A stretch of 64,000 bases of DNA from Octopus sinensis (Eukaryota), in contig NC_043024.1 of NCBI RefSeq assembly GCF_006345805.1, positions 10,230,001 to 10,294,000 on the forward strand, read 5' to 3'. Shown here piece after piece: positions 11,904 through 56,759 of the stretch; position 1 is the stretch's first letter, and each line of letters starts with the position of its first letter. The translations under genes were made by a program, and so were the position numbers. The notes under the pieces are model-generated. The model worked only from the letters and a program-made list of their open reading frames with translations. It did no database searches and was not told where the DNA came from.

Positions 11904-12200
11904 TGTGTCTGTGTTTGTCCCCCTAGCATTGCTTGACAACCGATGCTGGTGTGTTTAAGTCGCCGTAACTTAGCGGTTCGGCAAAAGACAACCGATAGAA
12001 TAAGTACTGGGCTTACAAAGAATAAGTCCTGGGGTTGAGTTGCTCGACTTAAAGGCGGTGCTCCAGCATGGTCGCAGTCAAATGACTGAAACAAGTAAAA
12101 GAGTAAAGAGAGAGCAAAGAGTATAAAACGAAGTCGGAATCATTTACAAAACAAACAAGAATATAGGAATACAGAATAATAGAATGAGACACTCAGTTTC

Positions 12201-12230
12201 TGACGTGGCACTCATAATTCCATGACGTCA
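12201..12230 (+). promoter_or_regulatory. TGACGTGG (UPRE-like) and TGACGTCA (CRE) motifs upstream of TMCO1
   Basis: Exact motifs at 12201-12208 and 12223-12230, 130-160 nt before the ATG. Confidence 0.4.
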
Positions 12231-12360
12231 GTAGGACAACAAGAGTTATCCCGTTTCTAACGTCGTGGGACGAATAAAATTTCCTTCACGCCTGTAAATA
12301 TTATATATATAGAAATATATATACAGAATATATATAGTCTTATTATATATACAGTTAAAT

Positions 12361-12437
12361 ATGTTGGTGGATTGCCTTCTTATCGTGTTTATATCAATTT
12401 GTACGGCGCTACTCGGTGAAGGTAGGTAAAGTAGACC

Positions 12438-12468
<31 letters not shown>

Positions 12469-12484
12469 ATGTATAATGTGAGAG

Positions 12485-12520
<36 letters not shown>

Positions 12521-13370: not shown

Positions 13371-16300
13371 TATATACGCGCGCGTGCACACACACATATA
13401 CAAAACGAAAGATTGCCTATATATGTATCTACACACCTTAAAAATTGCTGATTTACTATCACCAGTCCACACTCATTTGCCCCTACAAGTGATCCATCAA
13501 ACCTTTAAGCAACGACAAAAAAGAAAAAGAAAAGAGATTTGTTTAAAAAATGCAATTTGATTCATTTTATTTGCAAGAAGATCGAACTTACAAAAAAAAA
13601 AAACTTAGAGTAGGCACAGCATCGATCGATAGAATGAACACCCTTTCGTATACTCTTTTACTTGTTTCAGTCATTTGACTGCGGCCATGCTGGAGCACCG
13701 CCTTTAGTCGAGCAACTCGACCCCGGGACTTATTCTTTTGTAAGCCCAGTACTTATTCTATCGGTCTCTTTTTGCCGAACCGCTAAGTAACGGGGACGTA
13801 AACACACCAGCATCGGTTGTCAAGCAATGCTAGGGAGACAAACACAGACACACAAACATACACGCACACACATATATATATATATATATTATATATATAT
13901 ATACACATATATACGACGGGCTTCTTTCAGTTTCCGTCTACCAAATCCACTCACAAGGCTTTGGTCGGCCCAAGGCTATAGTAGAAGACGCTTGCCCAAG
14001 ATGTCACGCAGTGGGACTGAACCCGGAACCATGTGGTTGGTAGGCAAGCTACTTACCACACAGCCACTCCTGCGCCATCCTTTTGTCCATTCAAACGGAT
14101 GTATATAATTTAATTTTTAATTTACGTGACGTGTGACTTTTTTATTTCCCACAAGGGAACAACATAGATAAGGGACAATACAATCCGATTGGGGTCAGAT
14201 GGACGGATGGATATAACACAAAGATGACATTAAAAATTCACAAAAATATAAATAATTCGAATGGTAGGACAGACCTGAAGACATTACGGATGGAGTGGGA
14301 AGGCAGGTTTGATCCGGACCCCACGGGGCCCCGCCCCACCACTGATACCTAAGATACGTCCTGTGACGCATTCATGGGGTTACATTCACTCGCAACGTCC
14401 GTGTTAGGATCTTTTCGGTTTGACCGGCAGTTTTTTAAAATAATTTCTTTGTAACTAAACACTTTTAAACTTCGTATACTGAAAGAATGTGTTTAGAAAA
14501 CATCTTTTTCTCTTGGCTTTATTGAGAAAATTCTATAGTTTGTAAGATATTTGTTGTTTTTTTTCTTCAATTTCTGCAATTTCAACCAATCAATGATGTC
14601 TATTGAGGTAAAAAAAAACATTCTGTGCTATATGAATATGTCCCTCGTTTAAGAAATAGATTGGGTTTATTTACATTTCTGAAGAAAAAAAGATAATGAT
14701 TGTGGTAATTAAGGGTTTTTTTGTTTTGTTTCTGTTTGTTACAGGTTTAACATGGCTAATGGTTTACAGAACAGATAAATACAAGAAATTGAAATCTGAA
14801 GTAGAAAAACAAAGTAAAAAATGTAAGTAGGAGTTATCATCATCATCGTTTAACGTCTGTTTTCCCTGCTGGAGCACCACCTTTAGTCGAGCAAATCGAC
14901 CCCAGGTCTTATTCTTTGTAAGCCCATTACTTATTCTATCGATCTCTTTTACCGAACCACTAAGTTACGGGGACGTAATCACACCAACATCGGTTGTCAA
15001 GCGATGTTGGGGGACAAACACAGACAGCAGCAGTCACGGTAACATCAACACCATTTTTCTCTGCTGTAAGGCTCAATTCCTAACACGCTGGCTGAATTCA
15101 ATTCGTCTCCAGTCGAAAGACGCCTGTTGTGATGTCCTGTTATTATTATTATTTTTGTATTTATATTCGTGTAACATCATCTATTTTTCCGTCTTTGCTT
15201 TGTATACATTCAAAGCTTTTTTCCAAAGAATCTAATGCTCTTTGCTTAGTTTTTCCTTGGGGCTGGCCAGATTAGAGCAATCTCAAGATTAATCAGCCAA
15301 AATTGCAAGGATGATCTGGTTCTTGACTGAAGATTAAAGGCTTCGAATGACCCATCCGTGTTTTTTTGTATCGTCTATCTGGATGTTTTGCGTTCTTGTC
15401 CGATTTTGTATTTTTCTATATATATATATATATATACACACACACGTACATGTGTATATACATATATACGATGGGCTTTTTTCAGTTTCCATCTACCAAA
15501 TCTACTCACAAGGCTTTGGTCAGCCCAAGGCTATAGAAGAAGACACTTGCCCAAGGTGCTACGCAGTGGGAATGAACCTGGAACCATGTGATTCGTTAGC
15601 AAGCTACTTACCACACAGCCACTCCTGCGCCTCCAGTGTATATATATATACACACACATACATGTATATATACGATGGGCTTCTTTCAGTTTCCGTCTAC
15701 CAAATCCACTCGCAAGGCTTTGGTCAGCCCAAGGCTATAGAAGAAGACACTTGCCCAAGGTACTACGCAGTGGGAATGAACCTGGAACCATGTGGTTGGT
15801 AAGCAAGCTACTTACCACACAGCCACTCCTACACCAATATTATTATTTGTTTGTTGTTGTTTTTTTTCAGTGGAGAAGCAAAGAGAAGCTGGAATGGACG
15901 TAGCTGATCGAAACCAGAAGAAAAAGTTAGGTAAGTCTGGGACGAGTCCTACCGTTTTTCTTTGTGGGAGAATGAGTAAAGCAACTGCCAAAAAGTGATT
16001 TGTGATTCTGAGTTATTTGCCCTTACATTGCGAGTTCAATCCCAGCAGGTATTACCTCAACTTTTCATCAGTCCTGTTTCAATTAAACAGAATACCAATT
16101 AAGGCAACCGTATCCCTCCCTTCAAAATTTGTAGCTTTTGTGAATGCCTTAAAAATCATTATCATTAGCAAGGTCCCTAGGGAGCAGAAACATTAGTAAT
16201 GTCATCAACATAACTCCTAACCCCAAAATTGCTAGACTTGAGCTAAAATTTGAAACCTTTATTATTATTACTATTATTATTATTATTATTATTATTCTAT

Positions 16301-17622
16301 GTTTGACTTTTGCTTTATATTTGTACAAGTTGGCTCCAAGTCTCACCCAGAGACCTCAAGAGACAACAGGTTAGAAGTTCATGTTGGTGTTATGCCTAGG
16401 GTGCCATATATTTGGTTTTGTACATAGTGTTGTACTAGTGAATGTTTAACAAACCATTATTAATATTGTTATTATTATCAATATGAGTAAAATGCTTAGA
16501 GCTATTTCATCCAGCTATTTCACATTTTGAGTTCCAATTCCACTGGAATTGCCTGTCATCCTTTTGGGGTTGGTAAATTAAGTACCTGTGACACACTGGG
16601 GTCAGTGTAATTGACTAGTCCCCTCCCACCAAATTTCAGGCCTTGTGCCTATAGTAGAAAGAATTATTATTATTATTATTATTATTATTGAGTGAGAGAG
16701 CAGTGCATGCCATCAAAGTGACACTGGGGTAAAATATACAAAGCCCAGTATACCCATCATGACTACCCGTCTGATAAGGGTACACCAGGCACATGCATCA
16801 CAACCATATGTGCGCGACATGGTGATCTCGTGTCAAGATAAACAGCGCTTGACCTTGCAGGTGGGGCCCAGTTAGAATTTTCTTCTGGTTGAGTAACCCA
16901 TCCCGCTTAAAAGGTCCCTGTTTAAGGATGTTGAAAGAACCACCCATGTTTCCAGAGGTGAATTATTCAAACCTCTAAGAATTCCTCTCAACACATGGCT
17001 ATGATGCTCCCCCACTACTTCTGCTCATGATCAGAGATGCACATATCGTCAGCCACTAAGGGACATGCTCAACTGGTTAAGGTCAAACAACTGACAAACA
17101 AATCTGTGGTATTGAGCAGAATATTTGCTGTAGCCCATCTTTTATACCAAGACAAAACAATGTACATGATAACACTTCCAATCAGTTAAGATCAGAAGCC
17201 ACGAGAGCCACTGCCTGGTACTGCATCAGGGTATTGAGCCACTGCCTGGTACTACATCAGGGCATTTATTATCATTATTATTATTAGTAGTAGTAGTAGT
17301 ATGTATAAGGATAAGTTGGAACAATTATTAAAATCTCTTGAGATTCATTTGACTTTCTTGGGAAAGTTATCGTCTCGATTGATCTGCATGGTGTAAAACG
17401 TGTCATGATGCTTCAAAACGATTTTGAGTTGAAGAAACGGAACCATAAAAGAATTGTCTCCTGCACTCAACAGACCATATTTGTCCAGTCTCCCACTCAC
17501 ACTCTTCCTCATAATCTGTTTCTTCCTTTCTCTCTCAGAACGCCAAGAAGAGAAACTGAAAAACAACAGTCGAGATTTATCATTGGTGAGTCTATTGATT
17601 ACTTTATAAATACATATATATA

Positions 17623-17676: not shown

Positions 17677-20600
17677 CATATATATATATACATATATACA
17701 TATATATACATACATATATATATGACTGAAGAAGGGGAATTTTCCTTGTTTTGTATGTTCTGTACTCTATTTTTTCATTGTTTAAGAAAAATGTCCATTT
17801 CCTTGGTTTTGTGTTTATGTTTTCGTTTCTCATTGTGTTCGACGTCCTTTTGATGTCCTGTACCCATATATGCGTGTATATATACACGTAGAGGTAGGTA
17901 CGTACATGTATGTATGTATATATGCATATGTTTTATTTCATTTATTAATTTATTATATATAAATACATATATATACAATTGCAGTGTGGAAGGTGTTTAT
18001 AAGCCATTTAAGAAACACAAAAAACGTTAAATTCACTTTAACATTTAAGTTTAATTTGTCAAAATATTTTCGTCGCTTTGAGACCACGATGACCTGTTCA
18101 CTGACAAAATTCGACAAATTAAATTTAAATGTTGAAGTGAATCGAACAGTTTTTGTGTGTTTCTTAAATGGCCTATAAACACCTTCCACCAGGCTGCAAT
18201 TGCTTTCGTTCCAGCACACGATCTCAGATCAGGTCACTTGCTATGCAAGTACATCTCCGTAATATATATATTGTGTTGTCTGGAAAGTTTGTGCTGATTT
18301 ATAGTAGCTTACCTTTCGACTTAGTTTAGAACATGTTTGAGTCCATAAAATAGGATTTGACTACACCTCCATTTAGAGAAAAGTGGAAGAAGGTTTATGT
18401 TTCTATAACCTGTGTTAATTCTGTAACCTTTTAAAATGGAAGACAAGAAAGTTCATTTTCGGCACTTGATGCTTTTCTTTTTTCCATAAAGGGAAAAATG
18501 TCTCACAACCAACCAAAGAAATATGCGCAGTTTGCGGTGATGTTTCTTTATCCGAAAGAACTGTACGGAAGTGGTTCGCAAGGTTCCGAGCTGGAGATTG
18601 TAGCCATATTGATAAAGAGCGATCAGGCAGACCATCCACTACAGATGATGACCAAATCAAGTCATTAATTGAGAATAACCCAAGAATTGGCAGAAAGCCT
18701 CAGCCTATCAAAATCCGTCATTCATAAGCACCTGGTAAAGCTTGGGTACACAAATCACTACGATGTTTGGGTACCACATGAGTTGAGTGAGAAGAACCTT
18801 TTGGATCGCATTTCCATCTGTGATTTGCTTTATAAATGGAATGAAAACAGATACACAAACACACACATACATATATACAATGGGCTTCTTTCAGTTTCCA
18901 TCTACCAAATCCACTCACAAGGCTTTGGTTGGCCCGAGGCTATAGTAGAAGACATTGCCCAAGGTGCCATGCAGTGGGACTGAACCCAGAACCATGTGGT
19001 TTGTAAGCAAGCTACTTAGCACACAGCCATCTTGATAAACATTACAAAAATTTTGCTGTAAAATTCCAGTGAAATAATCCCAGTAGAAAGAACTGACTTA
19101 TCCAAATTTCCAGAAAAGCACCCAAATTTCTATTTATTTATTTGTTTATTTATTACAGGTTAAAATGAAATCCATGTTTGCAATTGGTTTTGCTTTCACT
19201 GCACTTCTGAGTATGTTCAATTCCATGTAAGTATTTTGGATATTTCTGTCTATTTGTGGCCTACGCCAAGGGTGTAACCCAGCCACTTATGCGTGCCCTT
19301 CCTTCATTAGACACTAAACTCTGCTTGCGAAGACTTGTTGAGGCAAGTGAAATCGAAATCGAATTCAATGACTGGCATCTGTGCTAGTTGAGCGCTAAGA
19401 GTACCATACAAGTGAGATCGGGGCCAGAGCAACAAGCTGGCCTCCGAGCCGATTGCATGTAAAGAACACCATTCGAGCAAGGTTGTTGCCAGTGCCGCTG
19501 GACTGGCTCCTGTGCAGGTCGCACATAAAAAGCACCATTTGTGCGTGGCCGTTGCCAGTACTGCCTGACTGGCTTTCATGCCGGTGGCACGTAAAAGCAC
19601 CCACTACATTCTTGGCGTGGTTGGTGTTAGGAATGGCATCCAGCTGTAGAAACTCTGCCAGATCAGATTGGAGTCTGGTGCAGCCATCTGGTTTGCCAGC
19701 CCTCAGTCAAATCATCCAACCCATGCTAGCATGGAAAGCAGACGTTAAATGATGATGATGATGTGGAGGGATCCTAACTGCCCCCCACGTGACCAAAAGT
19801 GTACTGACACATCAATAAAATAAAATAACTGTGTGAACTATCGGCAGTTGACAGCGTTGATCGTTCATATTGGATTATTGTGTTAGCTTAATATCATACT
19901 TACGTTTGGTGTAGTACAGAGTATTTTCTGCGTAAACATATTAATTCTGCTAATGGTTATTCTAGATAAACATATCCAAATATTTATTTCTTCGCCCTTG
20001 TGCACACCCCAACATCATCATGACATTATTGGCGATGAGATAAGACAGAACATATATATATATTATAATATTAGGGAGTATAGCTCCAAACTTACAGGGA
20101 AAAATTCAATTTAATATTAGATCAAATTTCTCAATATAATATATATAAATTAGAGAAAAACCACTATTATGCAATTCAAACAATGATAGACATGAACCAA
20201 ATCATAAATAAAAAATAAAATATATTTTTATAAAACATATAACTAGATCGCAAAAAGTACAAAAATGAATAAACAATATATAAAAAGTAAAAAGATTATG
20301 TACGTTTCATGGCTATAATTTAAATTCGAATTACAATTGAATTTGAATTTAATCGAAAAACAATTCAAATTAAAATTATAGTCACTCCTCAGGTCAACAA
20401 TAATAACAATGTTTAAAGGGTTAATAATGTTACGACTGTTCATTTGTTCATGGCTGTTAATTTTTATTGTTTTTTTTTCTTTTCTTGTCTTTTCTTTTTA
20501 TTCTTACCCAATGAAAACAATCTAGTTTCGATGGCCGAGTGGTTGCTAAGTTACCATTTACTCCAATTTCACTGATGCAAGGTCTTTCACATCGAAATCT

Positions 20601-23600
20601 AGCCGGAGACGATTACACTCATTGCTCGTTATCTTCCTCTACATTCTATGTACAATGTCTATACGCCAGGTAAGAACTCTTTCATCTTCACACATTTGCC
20701 ATCATCATCATCATCATTTATTAGCGATTGAGGGAACTGCCCCACGCTAGCGGTTGAGGGAACCTGTGGAAGAGGTAGACCCAGGAAGACCTCGGAGGAG
20801 GTGGTGAAGCATGACCTTTGAACATTGGGCCTCACCGAGGCAATGACCAGGACCTTTGGAACTATGCTGTGCTTGAGAAGACTCGGCAAGCTCAAGTGAG
20901 ACCATAACCTCGTGGCCTATGCCAGGGGTGTAACCAGCCCACTTGTGCATACCTTTCCTTCATTGGACACTAAACTCTGCTTGTGAAGACCTGTTGAGGC
21001 AAGTGAAATCGAAATCAGATTCGATGACTGACATCCGTGCTAGTGGAGCGCTAAGATTACCATACGAGTGTGATTGTTGACAGAGCAACAAGCTGGCCTC
21101 CAAGCCAATGGCACATTAAAAAACACTATTTGAGCGTGATCGTTACCTGTGTTGCCTTACTGATACTTATGCTGGTGGCACGTGAAAAAACATTTTAGCA
21201 AGGACATTGCCAGTGCCGCTGGACTGGCTCCTGTGCAGGTGGCACATAAAAGGCACCATTTGAGCGTGGCCATTGCCAGTACCGCCCGACTGGCCCTCGT
21301 GCCGGTGGCATGTAAAAGCACCCACTACATTCTTGGCGTGGTTGGTGTTAGGAATGGCATCCAGCTGTAGAAACTCTGCCAGATCAGATTGGAGTCTGGT
21401 GCAGCCATCTGGTTTGCCAGCCCTCAGTCAAATCATCCAACCCATGCTAGCATGGAAAGCAGACGTTAAATGATGATGATGATGTGGAGGGATCCTAACT
21501 GCCCCCCACGTGACCAAAAGTGTACTGACACATCAATAAAATAAAATAACTGTGTGAACTATCGGCAGTTGACAGCGTTGATCGTTCATATTGGATTATT
21601 GTGTTAGCTTAATATCATACTTACGTTTGGTGTAGTACAGAGTATTTTCTGCGTAAACATATTAATTCTGCTAATGGTTATTCTAGATAAACATATCCAA
21701 ATATTTATTTCTTCGCCCTTGTGCACACCCCAACATCATCATGACATTATTGGCGATGAGATAAGACAGAACATATATATATATTATAATATTAGGGAGT
21801 ATAGCTCCAAACTTACAGGGAAAAATTCAATTTAATATTAGATCAAATTTCTCAATATAATATATATAAATTAGAGAAAAACCACTATTATGCAATTCAA
21901 ACAATGATAGACATGAACCAAATCATAAATAAAAAATAAAATATATTTTTATAAAACATATAACTAGATCGCAAAAAGTACAAAAATGAATAAACAATAT
22001 ATAAAAAGTAAAAGATTATGTACGTTTCATGGCTATAATTTAAATTCGAATTACAATTGAATTGAATTTAATCGAAAAACAATTCAATTAAAATTATAGT
22101 CACTCCTCAGGTCAACAATAATAACAATGTTTAAAGGGTTAATAATGTTACGACTGTTCATTTGTTCATGGCTGTTAATTTTTATTGTTTTTTTTTCTTT
22201 TCTTGTCTTTTCTTTTTATTCTTACCCAATGAAAACAATCTAGTTTCGATGGCCGAGTGGTTGCTAAGTTACCATTTACTCCAATTTCACTGATGCAAGG
22301 TCTTTCACATCGAAATCTAGCCGGAGACGATTACACTCATTGCTCGTTTATCTTCCTCTACATTCTATGTACAATGTCTATACGCCAGGTAAGAACTCTT
22401 TCATCTTCACACATTTGCCATCATCATCATCATCATTTATTAGCGATTGAGGGAACTGCCCCACGCTAGCGGTTGAGGGAACCTGTGGAAGAGGTAGACC
22501 CAGGAAGACCTCGGAGGAGGTGGTGAAGCATGACCTTTGAACATTGGGCCTCACCGAGGCAATGACCAGGACCTTTGGAACTATGCTGTGCTTGAGAAGA
22601 CTCGGCAAGCTCAAGTGAGACCATAACCTCGTGGCCTATGCCAGGGGTGTAACCAGCCCACTTGTGCATACCTTTCCTTCATTGGACACTAAACTCTGCT
22701 TGTGAAGACCTGTTGAGGCAAGTGAAATCGAAATCAGATTCGATGACTGACATCCGTGCTAGTGGAGCGCTAAGATTACCATACGAGTGTGATTGTTGAC
22801 AGAGCAACAAGCTGGCCTCCAAGCCAATGGCACATTAAAAAACACTATTTGAGCGTGATCGTTACCTGTGTTGCCTTACTGATACTTATGCTGGTGGCAC
22901 GTGAAAAAACATTTTAGCAAGGACATTGCCAGTGCCGCTGGACTGGCTCCTGTGCAGGTGGCACATAAAAGGCACCATTTGAGCGTGGCCATTGCCAGTA
23001 CCGCCCGACTGGCCCTCGTGCCGGTGGCATGTAAAAGCACCCACTACACTCTCAGAGTGGTTGGCGTTAGGAAGGCCATCCAGCTGTAGAAACTCTGCCA
23101 GATCAGATTGGAGTCTGGTGCAGCCATCTGGTTCGCCAGCCCTCAGTCAAATCGTCCAACCCATGCTAGCATGGCAAGCAGACGTTAAACGATGATGATC
23201 ATCATCATCATTTATAATCCACTTTTCCATGCTTGCCTGAGTCAGACAGTTTTATTTGAGTCATGTTTTCTACAGCCAGATGCCCCATCTGTGGTCAGCC
23301 CTTGCCTGTTTCCGATCTCAGTTTATATTTCCCTATACCCAGACATGTTTTTGCAGAGCATTGGAAGTGAATGACACTGTTTATATGACAGAGACACTTG
23401 TTTACAAATACCATTGTCATGTCAAGACACAAACATACTCATACACATTTGAAATCTGGGATCTTTACCTTTTGACCGACAGATTAAAAAATAATTCCTT
23501 GTAACTAAACACTTTCAAACTTCAGACACTGGTCGAAAGTGTCATATAAAATATCTTTTACTCTTAGCATTTTTGAGAAAAACTTATATTTACTTAGTTA

Positions 23601-24115
23601 TTTCACCTTAAAGTTCTCGTATTTTGGTAATTTCAACCAATCAATGACGTGTATTCAGCTGAATAAAATACACACACACGCACACATATAGACAACAGGC
23701 TTCTTTCAGTTTCTGTCTACCAAATCCAAACAAGGCATTGGTCGGCCCGAGGCTACAGTAGAAGACACATGCCTAAGGTGCCACGCAGTGGAACTGAACC
23801 CGGAACCATGTGATTGGGAAGCAAGCTTCTTACCATAACCCACTCCTGCAGTTACGTTAGCACCCATTTCACTGTTCGTTTTCATGCCACAAGGCGTCCC
23901 TGAGCATTTACCCCCTTCCCTTCACCACCACCATTTTCTATGTATTTTTTTTTCTTTTTGTTGTTACTTTTTGTTTCATTTTAATATTCGTTGTTATTTC
24001 TAATTACTGTTGTTAATTACAGAACATCCAAAAGCTACTTGGTTTGGCCCCTTCAAGAGTTGCTAACAAACAAGGAGTCGGATTCTTCTCACCCCCACCT
24101 CAATTTGTTAAATGA
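12361..24115 (+). CDS. TMCO1: TMCO1 (transmembrane and coiled-coil domains 1; ER GEL/translocon component), 7 coding exons, 183 aa
   Basis: Exons 12361-12421, 14745-14822, 15871-15930, 17539-17585, 19159-19226, 22244-22388 and 24023-24115 all have GT-AG borders and join in frame (552 nt): [50 protein letters not shown]...[27 protein letters not shown]...[13 protein letters not shown]...[28 protein letters not shown]...*. AATAAA at 24149. Confidence 0.96.
13147..13308. mobile_element. Internally deleted MULE-like MITE
   Basis: TIRs ggtactac...gtagtacc, same family as 36300-36608. Confidence 0.7.
16691..17265 (-). mobile_element. Unclassified insertion flanked by (AAT)n on both sides, probably a LINE 3' UTR
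   Basis: (ATT)n at about 16663-16690 and 17266-17285; no protein motif recognised. Confidence 0.45.
17976..18202. mobile_element. Fold-back MITE-like element
   Basis: caattgcagtgtggaaggtgtttata... is matched by ...tataaacaccttccaccaggctgcaattg. Confidence 0.65.
18269..18846 (+). mobile_element. Mariner relic, left TIR and transposase N-terminus
   Basis: TIR ttgtgttgtctggaaag; [16 protein letters not shown] and WVPHEL motifs, frameshifted. Confidence 0.85.
19262..19762 (+). mobile_element. RTE-type LINE 3' end (3' UTR with (GAT)n tail)
   Basis: Homologous to the 3' UTR following the RT ORF at 44568-45830. Further copies at 20738-21483, 22457-23200, 25362-25665, 49730-50050 and 50805-51230. 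Confidence 0.75.
19591..23048. repeat. Tandem duplication, about 1.72-kb unit (19591-21329 approximately equals 21312-23048)
   Basis: Offset of 1721 decreasing to 1719; I saw only four differences, all 1-nt indels. Confidence 0.95.
20526..20669 (+). other. TMCO1: Duplicate TMCO1 exon 6 (144 nt, 1-nt deletion)
   Basis: Same splice sites as 22244-22388; reads tcgttatc instead of tcgtttatc. Confidence 0.9.
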
Positions 24116-27128: not shown

Positions 27129-30100
27129 CTACAAGTACGGGGCCCATCCAATGTACATCTGGCACAAGAGTTTTTCATTTGTTGCCTCATGAATTAAATA
27201 GTTGACCTGACCCTCAACAGATAAGGGCAGGCCCCTTGGTTTGGTTTTTGATGCGTGGATTCCTCTCATGCGATGCTCAATCATCTGGACATGGGTCATT
27301 GCTTGCTCGTTGGTAATCTCACCAGAACTGACTTGATGTGATCTTTGGCCCTTAGTCAGTTTCTGCCACTCCACAAGAGGGTCATAAATAAATGGTTTTA
27401 GGACACTCATCAGAGGGTCCATTTGGTTCCGTAGTACTTTAAGGGTCACTTCACACGCCTGTCGGAAAATGCCTTCATATCCCATTGGTCCCATAGCTTT
27501 GACCATGTTGTTGGTCAAGCGGAACGGTACGCGCTCAGGCCACTCGAACGTCTCCCCTTTATTGAAGAGACAATTGAAATCGACATGGAGGCAGTCACCG
27601 GTTGTGGAGTCCATCAGTATGTTCTCGCCGTGTCTGTCCCCAAGTCCGAGGATATATCCGACCATGTCCATCACAGCAGAGGTTCGGGCGTATGCCAGTC
27701 TGGAATTGTACCAAGCTGTCGGGTCCGGAAATGTCCGCAGGAACCATTCGTAGAACACACTAGGGTGAAGATGAAGGAGCATTTTGAACAGTTCTAGTTT
27801 CCTATCAAGCGGGGCCTGAAGAGCTGGGATGTGATTCTTCAACTCCCGGTTACTGATTTGTAACCCCTTTTCGCGGTACAATTTGCGTAATATATACTGC
27901 AGACCACTCGTGTTGTTCACCCATTCTATGATGCCACATTCTTCATTCAGTGGAATCACGGTGTATGTGCGTATATGAAGCTGCCGCTTTCTGGCCTCGG
28001 GGTCTTTGCGTAGGAACTTGTTGACAATCGTAGTGAACTCCATCAAACGACAGTCCTTTCTCAAATCGTCCTTTGGTTTACACATCATTACATACAGGTG
28101 ACCATCGCTACCCTTTATCGTTATCTTTTTGGGTTTCTGTAACGAAGGTAAGATCTCAATTGTATCTTCAAAACTGCTGATATAAACGGTGTCGCCCGGG
28201 AAAGGATCGTGGTCGACTTTGTTATCAGTTTTCGTCATGGGCAATGTAACCGTCATCGAAGATTGCAAGGGGACGATTATGTTGCTGAAATTATGGTCGT
28301 CAAGGAGACGTTTAAGTGACTTGAAGTGCTGGGACAAACTCAAAGGCTGAGTGTCTGGGCAGTGGCGCTCAGACAATTCCAGCAGACGTTCTGTAAGTTT
28401 ATTGGCATCAAGTAAAAATTTGCCGAGTTCTTCCTTCATCAGTTTCGCTTGGTTGAATATCTCTTGGCATCTCTTTACCCGTTTTGGATATGACGATTTC
28501 GAGACAGCCATCAGCATCCAAACAGCTTGAGCAGGGAACGTGTACAGCAGTTTTGCAATTATTTTCACCAGGTGACGAAACACGTCCGAGTTTGCATGAC
28601 AGATGCGAGAGATGAGCTGTGAAAAAGCCGTGAAGAGTTGGTACGGCGCCAGTTTGCGACTTAGCTGTTCGATCACTTTGTTCAAATTCTGCAGAATGGT
28701 TTTCTGAGACTGCAGTTTTTGCATGTGCGATGCTTGATTCGACGTCTGGTCACGGAGCTCTGACTGAACGACAGTGGAACCATAATCCAGCCACAGACTA
28801 AGGAGCCTTGGAAGCGATTGGTAAATGTATTGGTTTCCGTACTGCAGTGATGTCCCGTAATTCTTCACAACAAATATATTGAACTCTCCTTGCTTCACTG
28901 AGTTTTCGTTGTCATCTATCAAGTTGTTCTTCATCTTGTCGTAGTATTTAGCAAGGAAGAAGTAGCCATCTTCCCATTCCGAACACGAGTCCGTGACATC
29001 ACGGTACTGCTTCAAAACGGTGTTGCTATCCGTGTTGGAAGTCTCATCGCAGTAATGCGTGTACAACAACTGCGCCTGAGCATAGGTGAACAGTTTTTTT
29101 TTGGCGCTCTTTGACATGTCCCTTTTCAGTTGATTCAGATTAGGGAAGTGCTCAGCCATGCCCTTCTCGAGGCAGGAGAGCGCTTGATCATTCTGACCCT
29201 TTTCCCAGAACCATTTGGCTTTCTCCAGGCAATATTCCGGCAGATTGGAGGAAGCTGCTTGAATGAGGGAGCCGTATGCCGTTTGGAGGTAACCGGCTTC
29301 GCGGGCAGCCGTCGCCGTATCAAGGAGCCATTTCCCTATCTGCGGGGAACAATTGGAACAGCTTTCCAGTGTGATGAGAGTACGTCGTAAAGTGAGTACA
29401 GGTTCCTGAATGCGAAAAGGAGACTGCATCAGCTTCGAACGTGCATCCCACTGCAATAGAAGCTCGTCAAGACTCACAGAATCAGATGAAATTTGTTGCT
29501 TGCTTTTGCTCCATTTGAGCTGAGTCTTGGAGTCGAATATAATTTTTTTCGCCTGCTCAATCTCATTGAGCATATGTAGTCGTACAATGTTTTCATAACC
29601 ACGAAGATATGAGAAGCTTTCCATGCTAGCTGCCGATAAGGGCCCCATTATTTCTATACGTGCGCTATTCAAATGCTTCTGATAGCTCTCTTCCTGTCGG
29701 TCCTTGATGGCCAAAAGAATTTTCCCCAAGCTCACGACCCAGTCGTTGCTTTCCTTCTCCAACTTCACATAAGATTCCAGTTTGGTCCAATCTCCGAGTT
29801 TCGACGTGGCCTCAATACGATAGGTGTTCAGTTGTGTGCTCCATGAAGGATGGTTAGCAATGACGCCGTCAGCATGAAGGAGGGCCTTGTTCAGCTGACC
29901 CAATTCCATCAAACTCCGCAGCCAACCATGATGATGAGAGATCTCTTCAGGCTCTAACTGCACAGCTCTTTCGTAACAAGCCTCCGCATCCTGGTACTGG
30001 CCAATGCTTTGGTGGGCCAAAATCTGTTGCACAAGGGTCGGCTGTGCTTGCCGAATGGCTGCAACCCCTGCTACACCATCATGTTCGTCTAACGCAACAT

Positions 30101-33100
30101 AGATGCGTTGCAACAGATCGAGGTGTTGTTGGATATTGCAATCGTTGTTTCTGATGAAATGTTCAAAGTGCATCAATGCACGTGTGAATGCATTGCAGTT
30201 GAAGCAAGCTTCTGCAAGGACGTCTTGCGGGATGTGATTCAGGAATGCGTTTACTGTTCTGTAACTGGAGTCTTTGAGATACACCGGTTCCTTAGACACA
30301 GGCATTTCGGCTACCTTAAGCTGTGCCCGGTTTGTCCTCCATTTCAATAAATAATCAAGAACAGAGAAAATGGTTTGGGCACACATGTGGCGCATATCAG
30401 TCACACTACCCTGTCGAGTATCCGACTTCCTTATCTGGTGTAACACTTCCATGATCTCATTGTGGATGTCTTGGATGTCCCCTTCGGTGCCATCTAGCAA
30501 GACTTGGGTGACGACATGTGGCAGTATATATAAAGCGATTGAAGGATCGTACCGTGTTATAGGACTGCATACTTGAAACACACGTAAGGGGTGGTTCTGT
30601 TGGACCCTAGAAGACAAATAAGTGGTCCAGATACATATCCATTCCTTGTACTTGCTGCCCTTCATGCTGCCATAAATCGGTTTCTGAAGATGATCCCAGC
30701 TGAAAGACGATGATGAAATATACTTGGAATTAAGCAGAGGTTGTAATATTTCTTGGACATGCTCCGGAAAACGATTCCAAAGTCTCCGTTCGGAACCATG
30801 TTCGTTATTTTCTTCGGGTTTGTCGCTTATTCTATAAATCTGCAAAAGATCCTGCAGCGCTAGAGATGCACAATCCTGCACCCGAGTTTCAGTAGCTGCA
30901 AGGAAAGCACGGATTATTTCATTTATAATTCCAATAGCAAAATTATCGTCTTCAGTACTTGCTTGGAATTTGGCCATTTCTTCTTTTGGATTATTCGATG
31001 TCAACTCGAGGCGTCCGGGATCGATAGCGCCGATCTCTCCAAGACAATCTCCAATCAGACATCGAACCCTGTGATCCGGAACCTTGCAAATGGATAAAAG
31101 CACGGAGATCAGCTGCGATACTATCGGATCCGCAGTTTCGTTGTCAAGCATGTACTGATGCAGCTGTCTTTGACTGCTATGAAGCAAATTCCTCAAATTT
31201 GACAAGGCATGGATTTGGACATCCAAGCTTTCGTGTGTCACACCACGTAACGTATGAGTGATCTTTGTTCTTAAATCCGATTGGCTGGAGAGGCTACTGG
31301 AGTATTGCTTCAAAACGTAATTCACATTGGACAGTTCTGGAATGTCGGGTAAAAAATATATTTCTTGGAAGTGACCACACAAAGCATCTTTGTTCTCAAT
31401 GATGAGGTAGTTGAAGATCTCAGCACACTGTGCAGGAAGCTGCTGAATCAACGGTAAAAGAGTGGCAGATATCGGTGACAACATGTCACCCAGAGCTGGC
31501 AATTCCACGCTTCGGATGAATGAGTTCCACGCTTGACAAGCAATTGCCAGGAAATCTTTCTCATCAAATCGTAGACTAATTCGGAGAGTATTCATAATTT
31601 TGTATCTCACAAACGTGATGTGTTTTGCTCCCATTAGCTGGATGATGGAATTTAAACTATCCAACGTGAGCTTTTTCTCTTCAATTGGAATGCTAGAAAT
31701 CAATAATTGAGAATCGAAGAAAGCCAAAATTCCAAGTAATCGAGGCTGGAGATAGTTGGCCATATCTTCTGTCGTGGTTATCTGTCCAGGATAGAAATCA
31801 TCGTAGGAGCAGAGACGCTGTAAACCTTTGAAGACTTCGGCGTAATTAGTACTCAAGTAGAGCAAGAGTTCGTTATGGACTCGTTGGAAGTCAATACGAA
31901 GCAGGTAAGTTAGTTCAATTTCAGTCTCGGCAAAATGGAACTGGAGGGCTTTTGCAATTTCCTGTTCGTTGTGATGTCGAATCAGATAAGAAAAAATGTA
32001 TTTCGTGGAAGAAATTAGAAGCTTCTTGCGACTTGGCACTTGTAAAAGAGTAGCAAGAAGCTTTATTAGAGATGATGCCGTCTGGGAAGCCATGGCAACC
32101 AATTGGGGAAGTAGGAATCGCTCGGTGCTATGTATGAAGGTTCTGATATCCACGTAATCAAACACATTGCTGACCTCTTTCAGTTTCTGTTCAGCTGTTT
32201 TGCCAATGTTTAATTTACAGGATTCATCCATTGTCTTGACCAGGAACATACAGACGGGTTGTTGGTAATTCATAAATATATTAAAGGGTTTCTCTCCTGC
32301 TTTTTTGGCTCTTGAAATGCCCTGAAGTTGCATGTAGGCCACAGCGCTGGAAACAGGAACATCAGAAACTATGTTTTCCAAAAGGAACAGAGTGACGTCC
32401 AACAGAAGAGGTCCACTTGAATATTTACCAAGCAGACCAACGGTCATCAGGATCGATTTCTGTAGCTTCACACTTTTCGTGTCTTTTAAATGTGCCAAAG
32501 AATTCTTCAGTTTCTCAAAGACAATATTTGCAACATCAAGACCAGAGACTTTGAGCAGATTCCAACAGCAGTTGCTGAACAAAATGCAAATATCGTAATC
32601 AGGATCGTTAATTAATTGCAGTGAGTAATTTAGCAAATTAAGAGCCCACTGTTCAGTGAGTTTTATCTCTACGTGGTTATAGACACGAAGCAGGCTGCGT
32701 GCCAGGGCCCTCCGATATGTTGCATCATTCATGTCTCTGTTACCAGAAAAACAAAGAAACATCTCCTGTATGATCGGTAACTTGGTCTGACTGACCAACT
32801 TCTTATGATTTGTCTTAGCATCGTCACACTGCTTGCATTTCAACTTGAAAAGTTCAAAGATGTTCACTTCACCCCCGTTCGAATCAAACGAATTACTCTG
32901 GCATATTTCAGTCTCTCCCGACAGAACGCAAACAAGTTCACCAAACACCGATGCCAAACTGTTGTCCACAGTGGAATTCTTCATGTTAAATAATGGCAAG
33001 AGCAACTCTGTCACGAGGTAAGCAAAGTTGTCTCCAAGAGTATGTAATAACACAACAGAGGAGCGAATTCCCTGCAGAATCAATGGAAGGCTTAAATTAT

Positions 33101-35108
33101 TGGCTAAAACTGATTTGTAGACGTGACAACGCCACTGACCAGCGATATATTTGGGGATCCAGCACAAAACTTCCATACAGATTTGACATGTGAGGTCATC
33201 TAAGAGAGGAGACAATTGGCCACTTATTTCCAACATCGGTTTGAGGTCAGCTGAATGTAGATCAAGCCAAGAAGCATTGTTGGCAAGCCATGGTAAAGAA
33301 AGTAGCACAACAAACTCACTTACCAATTCCGGCACTGCGGCGCTGAAATCGTTCACAATCAACAAAGCAGCAACAGATTTTGCCACAACCGGAAGACTGC
33401 AATTCAAAAGTTCCTTGGCCTTAGATTCATCAACGTTCTGAAGACTTGTACAAAGAGAAAACAAATTCTTCCATAGATAAGAGATTTCTGTTAATTCGTC
33501 TTTAGAGAGCCATTCGGTGAATTTCTGGTCAGTACTGTAAACTTTTGGTTGACCGTCCTTAGTATTCTTCTGTGAAGGATTGTCTTTGAAAGAATGGAAC
33601 AACACTACGGATACTTCCACAATAACCTGTACGCCAGTTAACATACATAACACCCCGTTGCTGTCATTGTACGACTTGCTTTTAAACGTTTCTAACTTTC
33701 GCTTAATTTCCGTGAATAGTTTCGATTTATCTTCTGGAGTTATTTTTTTTCTGCTATTGTTGCTGGTTTTGCTTTTTAAATGAGGGAGATATGGCAGTTT
33801 AGCTTTTTTGGGCGGATGTTCTTCAGTTTCCTTAGACAAATCATTCTCATTGAGACAGGAGGATTCCATTTCCCAAGACACCAACAGACATAAGTTCTGC
33901 ACCAGAAACTCTTTGTTGTAAACCCTGCCAACCAAATGACACAGCTTCTCCTTTAAAACATTAATAACTGGGCTGTAAACTGAATCAAATATATTCTGAA
34001 TTTGCTTTAACTTGATCAAAATATGGTTGAGAAATGAGCTGACGGCACTACACATGTCGGCAGATGGTTCTTGCTGCAACTTCTGAAGCCAGCCATAAAG
34101 ACTCATAAATTCTATAAACTTGTTCAACATGAGGTCCAAATTAGCTATGTCTAAATGATTACCAATACCAGAAGAATCAGCTTTGAGGAGAGCATTCAGG
34201 GTCTTAACATAGGCTGTCTCCATTTGAGACAATTCTTTTGATGTTAGTTCTGCCTGGTCTCCATACATCATCGGTGGAATCGCTACCAGAACAGCTACGA
34301 GATACTCAAGCAGCTCAAATTCCGGCACGCCATGAAGAAGCAGTAACTGTTCAATAACTTGTAACGAAGCAGCTTTCAATGGGACGTCTCCGAATTCGAC
34401 CTGGGCCAAAAGACTGGGACACAAAACAGACAGTAGTCGAGTATTCCACCCGCCGTTGAAGTATCGAACCTGTTGCGAGAACACCAACGTCAAATTGCTT
34501 TGCAGGATCTCACACGACTCGCAACCCAGTTTGATAACAGCTTGGCGTATTTCTGTGTTCTGTTCAGACGGAGGTAGGAAATTAGAAATCAGACGTAAAT
34601 CTACGTTAAAAAGATTCAAAACAATCGATCTGTTTTCATCGATAGATTCCAATCCAGAAGACTGAGTGACTGCGAGTTCACTAAGACAACAGGCCAGTTT
34701 TTCAAGGATTTTATGATACAGGTAAGGTTCGTTTATCTTCAAACTATTAAGAAACTGGACGATCAAGGCAACGCATTTCGGGTGGAGCTGGTGGCAGCCG
34801 GGGTGAGTGAAGAGGCTGAGAAGCTGCGATGTGAACCAGTACATAAATGCTTCGCATTCGTCGGGTGAGTCCTGGCTGGGTTGCTGGTTCTTGGTGAATT
34901 TAAACTCGTCTAAGATGTCCGAGGTAATTTTCAGCAAGAAGTGACACATAGATGCTGTGGGGCCAGCGAGTTTTTTGGCCACCGAGTCGAGGTCATAGAG
35001 AGACTGACCAATGTGTAACATGGCATATGTCAATTGACTCGTGTCGCTGGTCGTCTTGTATTTCTTGAGTAATTCTAGCAACAGATTGAAATCCATTGTC
35101 GATGCCAT
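27129..35108 (-). CDS. ATR: Serine/threonine kinase ATR (PIKK family), single-exon CDS, 2659 aa
   Basis: Uninterrupted ORF; ATG at 35108 in good context (gtgATGG; the ORF-track start is an upstream GTG). HEAT/FAT region, kinase motifs KPKDDLRKDCRLMEF, GLGDRHGENIL and HVDFNCLFNKG, and ATR-type FATC LPLSVEGQV...LCQMYIGWAPYL*. Confidence 0.97.
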   Translation of the reverse strand: MASTMDFNLLLELLKKYKTTSDTSQLTYAMLHIGQSLYDLDSVAKKLAGPTASMCHFLLKITSDILDEFKFTKNQQPSQDSPDECEAFMYWFTSQLLSLFTHPGCHQLHPKCVALIVQFLNSLKINEPYLYHKILEKLACCLSELAVTQSSGLESIDENRSIVLNLFNVDLRLISNFLPPSEQNTEIRQAVIKLGCESCEILQSNLTLVFSQQVRYFNGGWNTRLLSVLCPSLLAQVEFGDVPLKAASLQVIEQLLLLHGVPEFELLEYLVAVLVAIPPMMYGDQAELTSKELSQMETAYVKTLNALLKADSSGIGNHLDIANLDLMLNKFIEFMSLYGWLQKLQQEPSADMCSAVSSFLNHILIKLKQIQNIFDSVYSPVINVLKEKLCHLVGRVYNKEFLVQNLCLLVSWEMESSCLNENDLSKETEEHPPKKAKLPYLPHLKSKTSNNSRKKITPEDKSKLFTEIKRKLETFKSKSYNDSNGVLCMLTGVQVIVEVSVVLFHSFKDNPSQKNTKDGQPKVYSTDQKFTEWLSKDELTEISYLWKNLFSLCTSLQNVDESKAKELLNCSLPVVAKSVAALLIVNDFSAAVPELVSEFVVLLSLPWLANNASWLDLHSADLKPMLEISGQLSPLLDDLTCQICMEVLCWIPKYIAGQWRCHVYKSVLANNLSLPLILQGIRSSVVLLHTLGDNFAYLVTELLLPLFNMKNSTVDNSLASVFGELVCVLSGETEICQSNSFDSNGGEVNIFELFKLKCKQCDDAKTNHKKLVSQTKLPIIQEMFLCFSGNRDMNDATYRRALARSLLRVYNHVEIKLTEQWALNLLNYSLQLINDPDYDICILFSNCCWNLLKVSGLDVANIVFEKLKNSLAHLKDTKSVKLQKSILMTVGLLGKYSSGPLLLDVTLFLLENIVSDVPVSSAVAYMQLQGISRAKKAGEKPFNIFMNYQQPVCMFLVKTMDESCKLNIGKTAEQKLKEVSNVFDYVDIRTFIHSTERFLLPQLVAMASQTASSLIKLLATLLQVPSRKKLLISSTKYIFSYLIRHHNEQEIAKALQFHFAETEIELTYLLRIDFQRVHNELLLYLSTNYAEVFKGLQRLCSYDDFYPGQITTTEDMANYLQPRLLGILAFFDSQLLISSIPIEEKKLTLDSLNSIIQLMGAKHITFVRYKIMNTLRISLRFDEKDFLAIACQAWNSFIRSVELPALGDMLSPISATLLPLIQQLPAQCAEIFNYLIIENKDALCGHFQEIYFLPDIPELSNVNYVLKQYSSSLSSQSDLRTKITHTLRGVTHESLDVQIHALSNLRNLLHSSQRQLHQYMLDNETADPIVSQLISVLLSICKVPDHRVRCLIGDCLGEIGAIDPGRLELTSNNPKEEMAKFQASTEDDNFAIGIINEIIRAFLAATETRVQDCASLALQDLLQIYRISDKPEENNEHGSERRLWNRFPEHVQEILQPLLNSKYISSSSFSWDHLQKPIYGSMKGSKYKEWICIWTTYLSSRVQQNHPLRVFQVCSPITRYDPSIALYILPHVVTQVLLDGTEGDIQDIHNEIMEVLHQIRKSDTRQGSVTDMRHMCAQTIFSVLDYLLKWRTNRAQLKVAEMPVSKEPVYLKDSSYRTVNAFLNHIPQDVLAEACFNCNAFTRALMHFEHFIRNNDCNIQQHLDLLQRIYVALDEHDGVAGVAAIRQAQPTLVQQILAHQSIGQYQDAEACYERAVQLEPEEISHHHGWLRSLMELGQLNKALLHADGVIANHPSWSTQLNTYRIEATSKLGDWTKLESYVKLEKESNDWVVSLGKILLAIKDRQEESYQKHLNSARIEIMGPLSAASMESFSYLRGYENIVRLHMLNEIEQAKKIIFDSKTQLKWSKSKQQISSDSVSLDELLLQWDARSKLMQSPFRIQEPVLTLRRTLITLESCSNCSPQIGKWLLDTATAAREAGYLQTAYGSLIQAASSNLPEYCLEKAKWFWEKGQNDQALSCLEKGMAEHFPNLNQLKRDMSKSAKKKLFTYAQAQLLYTHYCDETSNTDSNTVLKQYRDVTDSCSEWEDGYFFLAKYYDKMKNNLIDDNENSVKQGEFNIFVVKNYGTSLQYGNQYIYQSLPRLLSLWLDYGSTVVQSELRDQTSNQASHMQKLQSQKTILQNLNKVIEQLSRKLAPYQLFTAFSQLISRICHANSDVFRHLVKIIAKLLYTFPAQAVWMLMAVSKSSYPKRVKRCQEIFNQAKLMKEELGKFLLDANKLTERLLELSERHCPDTQPLSLSQHFKSLKRLLDDHNFSNIIVPLQSSMTVTLPMTKTDNKVDHDPFPGDTVYISSFEDTIEILPSLQKPKKITIKGSDGHLYVMMCKPKDDLRKDCRLMEFTTIVNKFLRKDPEARKRQLHIRTYTVIPLNEECGIIEWVNNTSGLQYILRKLYREKGLQISNRELKNHIPALQAPLDRKLELFKMLLHLHPSVFYEWFLRTFPDPTAWYNSRLAYARTSAVMDMVGYILGLGDRHGENILMDSTTGDCLHVDFNCLFNKGETFEWPERVPFRLTNNMVKAMGPMGYEGIFRQACEVTLKVLRNQMDPLMSVLKPFIYDPLVEWQKLTKGQRSHQVSSGEITNEQAMTHVQMIEHRMRGIHASKTKPRGLPLSVEGQVNYLIHEATNEKLLCQMYIGWAPYL

Positions 35109-35183
35109 CACAATTAGAATGAAAAATATGACACTTTCCGTTGAGTGTGTACGAATTAATTATTATATCACTTTCTCAAAAGA

Positions 35184-42759: not shown

Positions 42760-43310
42760 TATTTCTTTACTACCCACAAGGGGCTAAACACAGAGGGGAC
42801 AAACAAGGACAGACAAAGGGATTAAGTCGATTATATCGACCCCAGTGCGTAACTGGTACTTAATTTATCGACCCCGAAAGGATGAAAGGCAAAGTCGACC
42901 TCGGCGGAATTTAAACTCAGAACGTAGCGGCAGACGAAATGCCTATTTCTTTATTACCCACAAGGGGCTAAACACAGAGAAGACAAACAAGGACAGACAA
43001 ACGGATTAAGTCGATTACATCGATCCCAGTGCGTAACTGGTACTTAATTTATCGACCCCAAAAGGATGAAAGGCAAAGTCGACCTCGGCGGAATTTAAAC
43101 TCAGAACGTTGCGGCAGACGAAATACCTATTTCTTTACTACCCACAAGGGGCTAAACATAGAGGGGACAAACAAGGACAGACAAACGGATTAAGTCAATT
43201 ACATCGACCCCAGTGCGTAACTGGTACTTAATTTATCGACCCCGAAAGGATGAAAGGCAAAGTCGACCTACGCATTTCGCCCAGCTTGCTAACGTTTCTG
43301 CCAGCTCACA
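42760..43310 (-). mobile_element. Three head-to-tail SINE B copies
   Basis: Unit of about 185 bp starting near 42760, 42944 and 43128. Confidence 0.9.
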
Positions 43311-55529: not shown

Positions 55530-56750
55530 CAAAAAGCAAGGCCATGTAGGGGCACATGGAGTTATGTACAGGGTGGTGTTCATGTAAAGAGTTCAGGCCA
55601 CTTGAGGTCAAGGGAGACTTTGAACAAAGCGGTCGTCGGCATCTTCACCATCTCGTCTGGTAGCTTGTTCCACGGATCCGCAACCCGGACGGAGAAAGCC
55701 CCTCTCCTTCGATTGAGATGAAATCGTCACAGATAGAGCTTTTCGGAATGACCCCGCAGCCGACGCTCTGGAGCAGGAGTGAAGAACAGCTCTTTCGAGA
55801 GGTTACACTTTCCGCTTATGCTGTTGTGAGGCCATGTAGGGGGACATGGAGTTATGTACAGGGTGGTGTTCATGCAAAGAGTTCAGGCCACTTGAGGTCA
55901 AGGGAGACTTTGAACAAAGCGGTCGTCGGCATCTTCACCATCTCGTCCGGCAGCTTATTCCACGGATCCGCAACCCGGACGGAGAAAGCCCCTCTCCTTC
56001 GATTGAGATGAAATTGTCGTAGATAGAGCTTTTCGGAATGACCCCGCAGCCGACGCTCTGTAGCAGGAGTGAAGAACAGCTCTTTCGAGAGGTTACACTT
56101 TCCGCTTATGATGTTGTGAGCGAGAATGAGATCACCACAGCGTCGTCGTTTTTCTAGAGAATAAAGGTCGAGCGTCTTCAGCCTTTCTTCATAAGACAAA
56201 TTCTTGAGACCAAGAACCATGCGGGTAGCCAGCTTCTGTACTCTTTCAAGATGCTGTATGTCTTTGAGGAGATCAGGAGAAGAGGCTTGAATCCCATACT
56301 CCAATATGGGTCTCACCAGCGTGACATAGAGCGGTAGGAATATGGCTGCTGTGAGCATTCCGAATGACCGTCGAATCAAGAACAGAATTTCGCGTGCTTT
56401 GTTGGCAGCATGGCCGCACTGGGCCGAAGGCGAAAAGGAGGAATCCACCAAGATACCCAGGTCCTTTACCTGATCGGTCCTCTCCAGCAGCAGACGACCC
56501 GGCTCGAAATCAAGTTGAGTTGCAGGAGGAGAGCCAACAGGCAGATGACAGCACTTTGACACGTTCAGAAACAGATCCCATTCGTTAGACCATCTCCAAA
56601 TTTGGTGGAGGCATCGACGAAGATCCTCTATATCACCGCCAGGAGCGACCAGTTTGACATCGTCGGCAAATAGAAGGGTGTGTTGCATGAGGTCGTCGGG
56701 CAAGTCATTTATGAAGACTAAGAACAATAAGGGCCGAAGCACATTTATCA
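55530..56750 (-). mobile_element. CR1-group LINE RT fragment with 290-bp 3' tandem duplication
   Basis: PLLFLVFINDLP, LFADDVKL, KDLGILVD and LVRPILEY motifs; 55540-55820 repeats at 55830-56110. Confidence 0.88.
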
Positions 56751-56759
56751 ATATATATA

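What the first reader, a model, noticed from the sequence alone, without database searches (positions are those of the whole stretch)
20526..22388. Duplicated TMCO1 exon 6 made frame-neutral by a 1-nt deletion
The native exon is 145 nt. The upstream duplicate is 144 nt, keeps both splice sites and has no stop, so including both gives an in-frame 231-aa isoform. That isoform repeats [13 protein letters not shown]...DDYTHCS and adds [14 protein letters not shown] in place of the hydrophobic segment. Skipping the duplicate gives the normal protein. However, all four inter-copy differences I saw are 1-nt indels, which is typical of long-read error.
Basis: partly seen in the sequence, partly recalled or inferred. 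Interest (0 to 1): 0.72.

Follow-up and report, generated by a model that had tools for sequence, protein, structure and literature searches.

The report
Octopus TMCO1 exon 6 tandem duplicate
The Octopus sinensis reference assembly carries a very young 1.72-kb tandem duplication of TMCO1 exon 6, formed by recombination between two flanking SINE-like repeats, but the 1-nt deletion that seems to keep it in frame is almost certainly an uncorrected long-read error, so this is an ordinary structural variant or assembly quirk and not a new protein isoform.

Summary
TMCO1 exon 6 occurs twice, at 20526-20669 (144 nt) and 22244-22388 (145 nt), with identical splice sites. Splicing in both copies gives an open 231-aa frame. 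The exon lies in a tandem duplication (19591-21329 and 21312-23048). The copies differ at four positions, all 1-nt homopolymer length differences, with no substitutions in about 1,736 nt. The junction repeat is a clean chimera of the two SINE-like repeats that flank the unit, which is the signature of unequal recombination. O. bimaculoides has one 145-nt exon and neither repeat. The window is Octopus sinensis GCA_006345805.1, a PacBio assembly. All four differences are derived deletions spread over both copies. The neighbouring 8-kb ATR reading frame has no frameshift, where 8-9 would be expected at the same rate. The TT is therefore most likely a consensus error left where short reads multi-map. 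With two 145-nt copies, using either copy alone gives normal TMCO1. Using both gives a stop after 160 aa. RefSeq isoform X1 (XP_029652633.1, 199 aa) is exactly the 144-nt copy joined to exon 7 out of frame, so it is probably spurious. I could not test whether the duplication exists in the animal (about 0.65) or is a false exon gain. Interest is low.

The parts
12361..12421 (+). TMCO1 coding exon 1 (ATG at 12361)
   Evidence: tblastn to human TMCO1; splice model and translation; the product equals P0121
14745..14822 (+). TMCO1 exon 2
15871..15930 (+). TMCO1 exon 3
17539..17585 (+). TMCO1 exon 4
19159..19226 (+). TMCO1 exon 5 (ends in phase 2)
19256..19764 (+). rep1: full-length copy of a ~508-bp SINE-like interspersed repeat in intron 5, absent at the orthologous site of O. 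bimaculoides
   Evidence: at least 7,195 candidate copies genome-wide, with the 40 scored at 82-89% identity
19591..21329 (+). Tandem duplication, copy 1 (1739 nt)
   Evidence: k-mer offsets; global alignment with 4 indels and 0 substitutions
20052..20410 (+). AT-rich ~360-bp interspersed repeat inside the duplicated unit (second copy about 21773-22128); it holds three of the four indel sites
20526..20669 (+). Duplicate exon 6' (144 nt; TT at 20628-20629 where the ancestral run is three bases long)
20912..21485 (+). rep2: chimeric junction repeat, 5' part identical to rep3 and 3' part identical to rep1
   Evidence: three-way alignment
21312..21329 (+). Crossover interval: 18 nt (GTAAAAGCACCCACTACA) shared by rep1 and rep3, where the switch occurs
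   Evidence: the 50-mer over it (21296-21345) is unique in the 2.72-Gb assembly
21312..23048 (+). Tandem duplication, copy 2 (1737 nt)
22244..22388 (+). Native-length exon 6 (145 nt), encoding IFDGRVV…[16 protein letters not shown] including the third hydrophobic segment
22631..23204 (+). rep3: SINE-like repeat in intron 6, part of a ~750-bp insertion absent in O. bimaculoides and flanked by the TSD-like CATCATCATCATTTAT(T/A)A
24023..24115 (+). TMCO1 exon 7, coding part through the TGA stop

Best explanation
TMCO1 is the ER-membrane protein of the EMC3/TMCO1 family, named a calcium load-activated calcium channel. In the Octopus sinensis lineage its exon 6 became flanked by two same-orientation SINE-like retroposon copies, one in intron 5 and one in intron 6. 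Unequal recombination between them, with the crossover inside an 18-nt identical stretch, produced a 1.72-kb head-to-tail duplication carrying exon 6 with about 935 nt of upstream and 660 nt of downstream intron. The event is very recent: no substitutions, which puts it at roughly 0.6 My or less. It is most likely a structural variant carried by the sequenced animal. The four 1-nt differences between the copies, including the TT that shortens the upstream exon to 144 nt, are uncorrected long-read consensus deletions. They persist because short-read polishing cannot place reads in a near-identical duplicate. In reality both exon copies are therefore 145 nt. Splicing exon 5 to either copy and then to exon 7 gives the same normal 183-aa mRNA. 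Including both copies shifts the frame and stops 8 codons into the second copy, giving 160 aa with the stop 121 nt before the last junction, so that transcript is a predicted NMD substrate. The allele is at best neutral and more likely hypomorphic, not a source of a new isoform. Shown here: the anatomy, the chimeric junction, the single-copy outgroup state, the polarity of the indels and the identity of RefSeq X1. Inferred: that the indels are errors, that the duplication exists in the animal, and the splicing outcome.
For: The duplication has 4 indel differences and 0 substitutions. rep2 matches rep3 on its 5' side, including a 65-nt block that rep1 lacks, and matches rep1 on its 3' side, with a single clean switch. 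O. bimaculoides (GCA_001194135.2) has one 145-nt exon 6 and lacks both repeats at the orthologous sites. All four differences are derived 1-nt deletions, three in copy 2 and one in copy 1. Older tandem repeats in the window differ by substitutions only. The neighbouring 8,031-nt ATR ORF has 0 frameshifts against 8-9 expected. The assembly is PacBio-based O. sinensis GCA_006345805.1. No N-gap lies within 146 kb, and this is the only such duplicate in 264 kb. RefSeq models use one copy each: X1 is 5-6'-7 and is frameshifted, the other is the normal 183-aa protein. No model with both copies is on record.
Against: No reads could be examined, so neither the copy number nor TT versus TTT was tested directly. 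This assembly has 5.2% duplicated BUSCOs against 0.4-0.5% in sister assemblies, which suggests it is prone to false duplication. A frame-restoring deletion would be favoured by selection if both copies are normally included, so the exonic indel is somewhat more likely to be real than a random one. Gene conversion could hide an older age.
Confidence: 0.62

Rival explanations
1. False exon gain. The animal has a single exon 6, and the assembler unrolled the rep1-unit-rep3 segment twice through a false overlap between the two SINE-like repeats. The four indels are independent consensus errors in two half-coverage copies.
For: The copies differ only by error-type indels. This matches the 'homotype' false duplications and false exon gains described in PMC9516828. 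The assembly has ten-fold more duplicated BUSCOs than its sister assemblies. No transcript model joins 6' to 6.
Against: There is no gap between the copies, and the nearest N run is 146 kb away. Gaps between the copies are a listed hallmark of false duplication. The junction is one clean switch inside 18 identical bases, with 100% identity to one parent repeat on each side. That is what recombination gives. A pile-up of reads from two 88%-identical repeats would be expected to give a mosaic consensus instead. It is not a pervasive artefact: one case in 264 kb. Spanning long reads of a single-copy locus would outcompete a 500-bp false overlap (inference).
Confidence: 0.3
2. The duplication is real and the upstream copy has truly lost one T, so inclusion of both copies yields an in-frame 231-aa TMCO1. 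That protein would carry a 48-residue insertion between the second and third hydrophobic segments.
For: The frame is open and both splice-site pairs are intact. Three hydrophobic segments are retained in the 231-aa product, and Pfam EMC3_TMCO1 still matches. Identical splicing context makes double inclusion the default, so a frame-restoring deletion would be selectively favoured (inference).
Against: It requires a real indel in a duplicate too young to hold a single substitution, next to three further indels of the same error type. A rough odds estimate uses the error density of the other three sites against the real indels expected in a duplicate with no substitutions, and gives about 25:1 for error. 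The 231-aa sequence is absent from the protein collection, while X1 and the normal form are present. The segment [16 protein letters not shown] is invariant in all orthologues aligned.
Confidence: 0.05

Closest known systems
Repeat-mediated (Alu-Alu-type, NAHR) intragenic tandem exon duplications, as known from human disease genes (my own knowledge, not checked in a paper here)
   Same: Two same-orientation interspersed repeats flank the exon. A chimeric repeat sits at the duplication junction, with the crossover in a short stretch of identity. An out-of-frame exon (145 nt) is duplicated, so double inclusion creates a premature stop.
   Different: The repeats are a ~508-bp octopus SINE-like family only about 88% identical to each other. 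The host is a cephalopod. Presence in the animal's DNA is not verified.
Tandem-duplicated exons used in a mutually exclusive way (PMC9013439, PMC9741552, PMC8373072)
   Same: Adjacent homologous exons have the same splice phase. The two RefSeq models each use exactly one copy. A length that is not a multiple of 3 means that frameshift plus NMD would enforce one-of-two usage.
   Different: Known cases are mostly ancient, and their copies have diverged to give distinct isoforms. Here the copies are essentially identical, so the choice makes no protein difference, and no regulated exclusivity mechanism is evident.
False exon gains from assembly duplication errors (Ko et al. 2022, PMC9516828)
   Same: A near-identical exon duplicate lies on one scaffold of a non-phased long-read assembly. 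The differences look like sequencing error. It has already caused a mis-annotated isoform.
   Different: There is no gap between the copies. The junction has a recombination-type chimeric repeat. Read-depth criteria could not be tested.

Membership tests
TMCO1 / EMC3_TMCO1 (PF01956) gene | Significant match to the family profile and orthology to named TMCO1 proteins | tested here: met
   PF01956 matches at E=1.5e-44, 152 bits against a cut-off of 27.1. The protein is 100% identical to O. bimaculoides XP_014769959.1 and 77-87% identical to the mollusc and vertebrate proteins listed.
NAHR / repeat-mediated tandem duplication | Two homologous repeats in direct orientation flank the ancestral single-copy segment | tested here: met
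   rep1 (19256-19764) and rep3 (22631-23204) are both on the + strand and 85-90% identical.
NAHR / repeat-mediated tandem duplication | The junction repeat is a chimera, distal-repeat 5' part plus proximal-repeat 3' part, with one switch point | tested here: met
   rep2 equals rep3 up to 21311 and equals rep1 from 21330. The switch lies inside 18 identical nt.
NAHR / repeat-mediated tandem duplication | Single-copy ancestral state in an outgroup | tested here: met
   O. bimaculoides locus L009 has one exon 6, at 12177-12493.
NAHR / repeat-mediated tandem duplication | Two copies present in the organism's DNA (read depth, spanning reads, PCR) | not testable with these tools
   No read data are available. 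Only the assembly was searched.
Mutually exclusive tandem-duplicated exons | Homologous adjacent exons of equal length and phase | tested here: inconclusive
   The assembly gives 144 versus 145 nt. The lengths are equal only if the TT is an error.
Mutually exclusive tandem-duplicated exons | Copies diverged so that the two choices encode different protein segments | tested here: not met
   There are no substitutions between the copies.
Mutually exclusive tandem-duplicated exons | Transcripts contain one and only one of the copies | not testable with these tools
   Only the RefSeq models X1 and normal each use one copy, and reads map ambiguously to identical exons.
False exon gain (assembly false duplication, PMC9516828) | Gap between the duplicated pair on the same scaffold | tested here: not met
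   The nearest N runs are at positions 169832 and 250508 of the 264-kb stretch.
False exon gain (assembly false duplication, PMC9516828) | Half or low read depth on the copies, and haplotype-specific k-mers | not testable with these tools
   No reads are available. The absence of substitutions argues against the haplotype ('heterotype') kind but is compatible with the 'homotype' kind.

The most novel reading that the evidence does not exclude
The duplication is real and the upstream copy truly lost one T soon after the event. A duplicate that would otherwise be frame-breaking then becomes an in-frame 48-residue insertion in the TM2-TM3 loop of TMCO1. That would be a caught-in-the-act example of compensatory rescue giving a new isoform of a highly conserved ER membrane protein.
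Probability: 0.05. Interest if true: 0.55.

Novelty: new member of a known kind. Interest (0 to 1): 0.15.

Why it matters
The main value is for curation. The O. sinensis reference has also been used as the basis of an O. vulgaris genome annotation. It carries a doubled TMCO1 exon 6 with a 1-nt error that has already produced a spurious RefSeq isoform: XP_029652633.1 has a frameshifted C-terminus and lacks the third hydrophobic segment. If reads confirm the duplication, it is a clean and very young example of SINE-mediated exon duplication in a cephalopod. It would probably be a hypomorphic TMCO1 allele segregating in the species. It does not open a new biological question.

Tried and rejected
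P0106 was not on record because the window's own genome is left out.
- The exact 231-aa and 160-aa products are not in the protein collection. This is weak evidence, because no Logan transcript of an Octopus species was present even for the normal protein. For that reason I ran no further search on the frameshifted tail.
- Rfam found no tRNA, 7SL or 5S head in the repeats at E<=0.1, so 'SINE-like' rests on size, copy number, defined ends and TSD-like flanks only.
- I considered and rejected haplotype concatenation (a 'heterotype' false duplication), because the copies have no substitutions.
- I considered and rejected a false duplication next to a gap, because no N run lies within 146 kb.
- I considered and rejected a second TMCO1 locus or haplotig. 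There is only one locus, plus an unrelated 41% hit on C13496.
Full report
**What is in the sequence**

The window is G000:C28:10230001-10294000 of a 2,719,151,902-bp assembly in 13,516 scaffolds.

A seven-coding-exon TMCO1 gene lies on the + strand. Its exons are 12361-12421, 14745-14822, 15871-15930, 17539-17585, 19159-19226, 22244-22388 and 24023-24115, all with GT-AG introns. The 183-aa product matches Pfam EMC3_TMCO1 at E=1.5e-44. It is letter-for-letter XP_014769959.1 (O. bimaculoides) and XP_029652634.1.

**Check of the observation**

An extra copy of exon 6 sits at 20526-20669. It is 144 nt against 145 nt for the native exon, with identical acceptor and donor contexts.
- Including both copies gives an open 231-aa frame (…[26 protein letters not shown]…).
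- Skipping the upstream copy gives the normal protein.
- Using only the upstream copy gives a frameshifted 199-aa product.

**The larger structure**

The exon is a passenger in a 1.72-kb head-to-tail duplication, 19591-21329 versus 21312-23048. A global alignment shows four differences and no substitutions:
- 20289, A5 versus A4
- 20342, T3 versus T2
- 20367, A3 versus A2
- 20628/22347, T2 versus T3

The unit is bounded by copies of a ~508-bp interspersed repeat. rep1 (19256-19764) is a full-length member of a family with at least 7,195 candidate copies in the genome. rep3 (22631-23204) lies downstream.

The middle copy, rep2 (20912-21485), is identical to rep3 on its 5' side, including a 65-nt block that rep1 lacks. 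It is identical to rep1 on its 3' side. There is a single switch, inside an 18-nt stretch (21312-21329) that the two parent repeats share. This is the textbook product of unequal crossing-over, or homology-guided template switching, between two direct repeats.

**Ancestral state**

The orthologous O. bimaculoides locus (L009, GCA_001194135.2 CM046627.1) has one exon 6 of 145 nt. It lacks both repeats at the orthologous positions. The upstream site reads straight through. The downstream ~750-bp insertion in O. sinensis is flanked by the TSD-like CATCATCATCATTTAT(T/A)A.

The order of events is therefore: two retroposon insertions after the split from O. bimaculoides, which was about 34 Mya according to PMC10700109, and then the duplication.

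Orthologous intron blocks are about 88-93% identical. Zero substitutions in about 1,736 nt bounds the copy divergence at roughly 0.17% or less. That corresponds to an age of about 0.6 My or less. This is a rough inference that ignores gene conversion. It places the event later than the 2.5-My O. vulgaris/O. sinensis split.

**Are the four differences real?**

Several lines say they are not.
- Six other genomic copies of the AT-rich repeat that holds the three intronic sites all keep the longer state, so copy 2 carries three derived 1-nt deletions.
- O. bimaculoides keeps 145 nt, so copy 1 carries the fourth deletion.
- Four 1-nt deletions in runs of 3-5 bases, scattered over both copies and accompanied by no substitution, is the error profile of a long-read consensus and not a mutational spectrum.
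- Older tandem repeats in the same window differ by 16 and 10 substitutions with no gaps.
- The adjacent ATR gene is one uninterrupted 2,676-codon frame (27129-35159, minus strand). At the duplicate's per-homopolymer-run indel rate, 8-9 frameshifts would be expected there and none is seen, P about 2e-4.

Unique sequence here is therefore clean, and the errors are confined to the near-identical duplicate. The ordinary reason is that polishing reads cannot be placed uniquely in a duplicate (inference).

I put the chance that the exonic TT is real at about 5%.

**Consequences for the gene**

If both copies are 145 nt, exon 5 joined to either copy and then to exon 7 gives the same normal mRNA.

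Double inclusion reads …SIRQFRWPSGC* and gives 160 aa. The stop ends 24 nt into the second copy, 121 nt upstream of the last exon junction. That transcript is a predicted NMD substrate, by the EJC rule as established in vertebrates; its application to octopus is an inference.

The two copies share all sequence for about 935 nt upstream and 660 nt downstream, and they are separated by a 1,574-nt intron. Nothing visible would prevent double inclusion. A real duplication allele is therefore more likely hypomorphic than innovative.

The 231-aa product would keep three hydrophobic segments, because the first copy's [15 protein letters not shown] (mean hydropathy 1.70) becomes [15 protein letters not shown] (0.76). 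This matters only if the TT is real.

**Annotation consequence**

RefSeq 'isoform X1' XP_029652633.1 (P0106, 199 aa) is exactly the exon 5 - 6'(144 nt) - exon 7 splice, read out of frame to …KILKNILKINTS. It lacks the third hydrophobic segment, which is invariant in every orthologue aligned. It is best regarded as an artefact of the 1-nt error. No model that includes both copies is on record.

**Is the duplication itself real?**

This could not be tested without reads.

For a real duplication:
- The junction is a clean, single-switch chimera.
- The duplicate sits in the interior of a contig, with the nearest N runs 146 kb away. Gaps between copies are a stated hallmark of false duplications (PMC9516828).
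- It is the only such duplicate in 264 kb.

For an artefact:
- The differences between the copies are of error type only.
- This assembly has 5.2% duplicated BUSCOs against 0.4-0.5% in related assemblies.
- False exon gains are a documented class.

I estimate about 0.65 that it is real and about 0.3 that it is a false exon gain. The 50-mer spanning the junction (window 21296-21345) is unique in the assembly, so it is a ready diagnostic for raw reads.

**Verdict**

The attractive reading, a frame-neutralised duplicate giving a new isoform, is very probably wrong. What remains is either an ordinary, very young repeat-mediated exon duplication or an assembly duplication, plus one spurious database isoform. 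Interest is low.

Noticed in passing
window 27129-35159 (- strand): The ATR kinase orthologue is a single uninterrupted 2,676-codon open frame, 4 kb downstream of TMCO1 and convergent with it. The O. bimaculoides neighbour is called as a 2,659-aa product with ATR HEAT/UME/FAT/PI3K/FATC domains. ATR has many exons in most animals (my own knowledge), so an intronless copy suggests a retrogene-type origin in octopods.
   Followed up: partly
G000:C13496:294208-294420 (- strand), unplaced scaffold: There is a 104-aa open frame with 41% identity to TMCO1 residues 83-153 (E about 1e-9). It could be a divergent paralogue, or a contaminant or foreign sequence on an unplaced scaffold.
   Followed up: no
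window 20052-20410 and 21773-22128: An AT-rich ~360-bp interspersed repeat has thousands of candidate copies (6,917 in the first look). Several genomic hits occur as adjacent inverted pairs, for example C9:33086327-33086576(+) with 33086681-33087029(-), which suggests a MITE-like or foldback element.
   Followed up: partly
window 42760-43269 and 55539-56120; positions 85339-86312 of the 264-kb stretch (L012): Older local tandem repeats occur here: 184-nt and 290-nt units at 95-97% identity that differ only by substitutions, and a 67-nt minisatellite. I used them only as a contrast to the indel-only duplicate.
   Followed up: partly
window 55870-56778 (-) and 61607-62401 (+): Long ORFs look like fragments of retrotransposon reverse transcriptase (motifs such as FADD and YMDD in the translations). 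This is consistent with LINE-type elements that could mobilise the SINE-like repeats.
   Followed up: no
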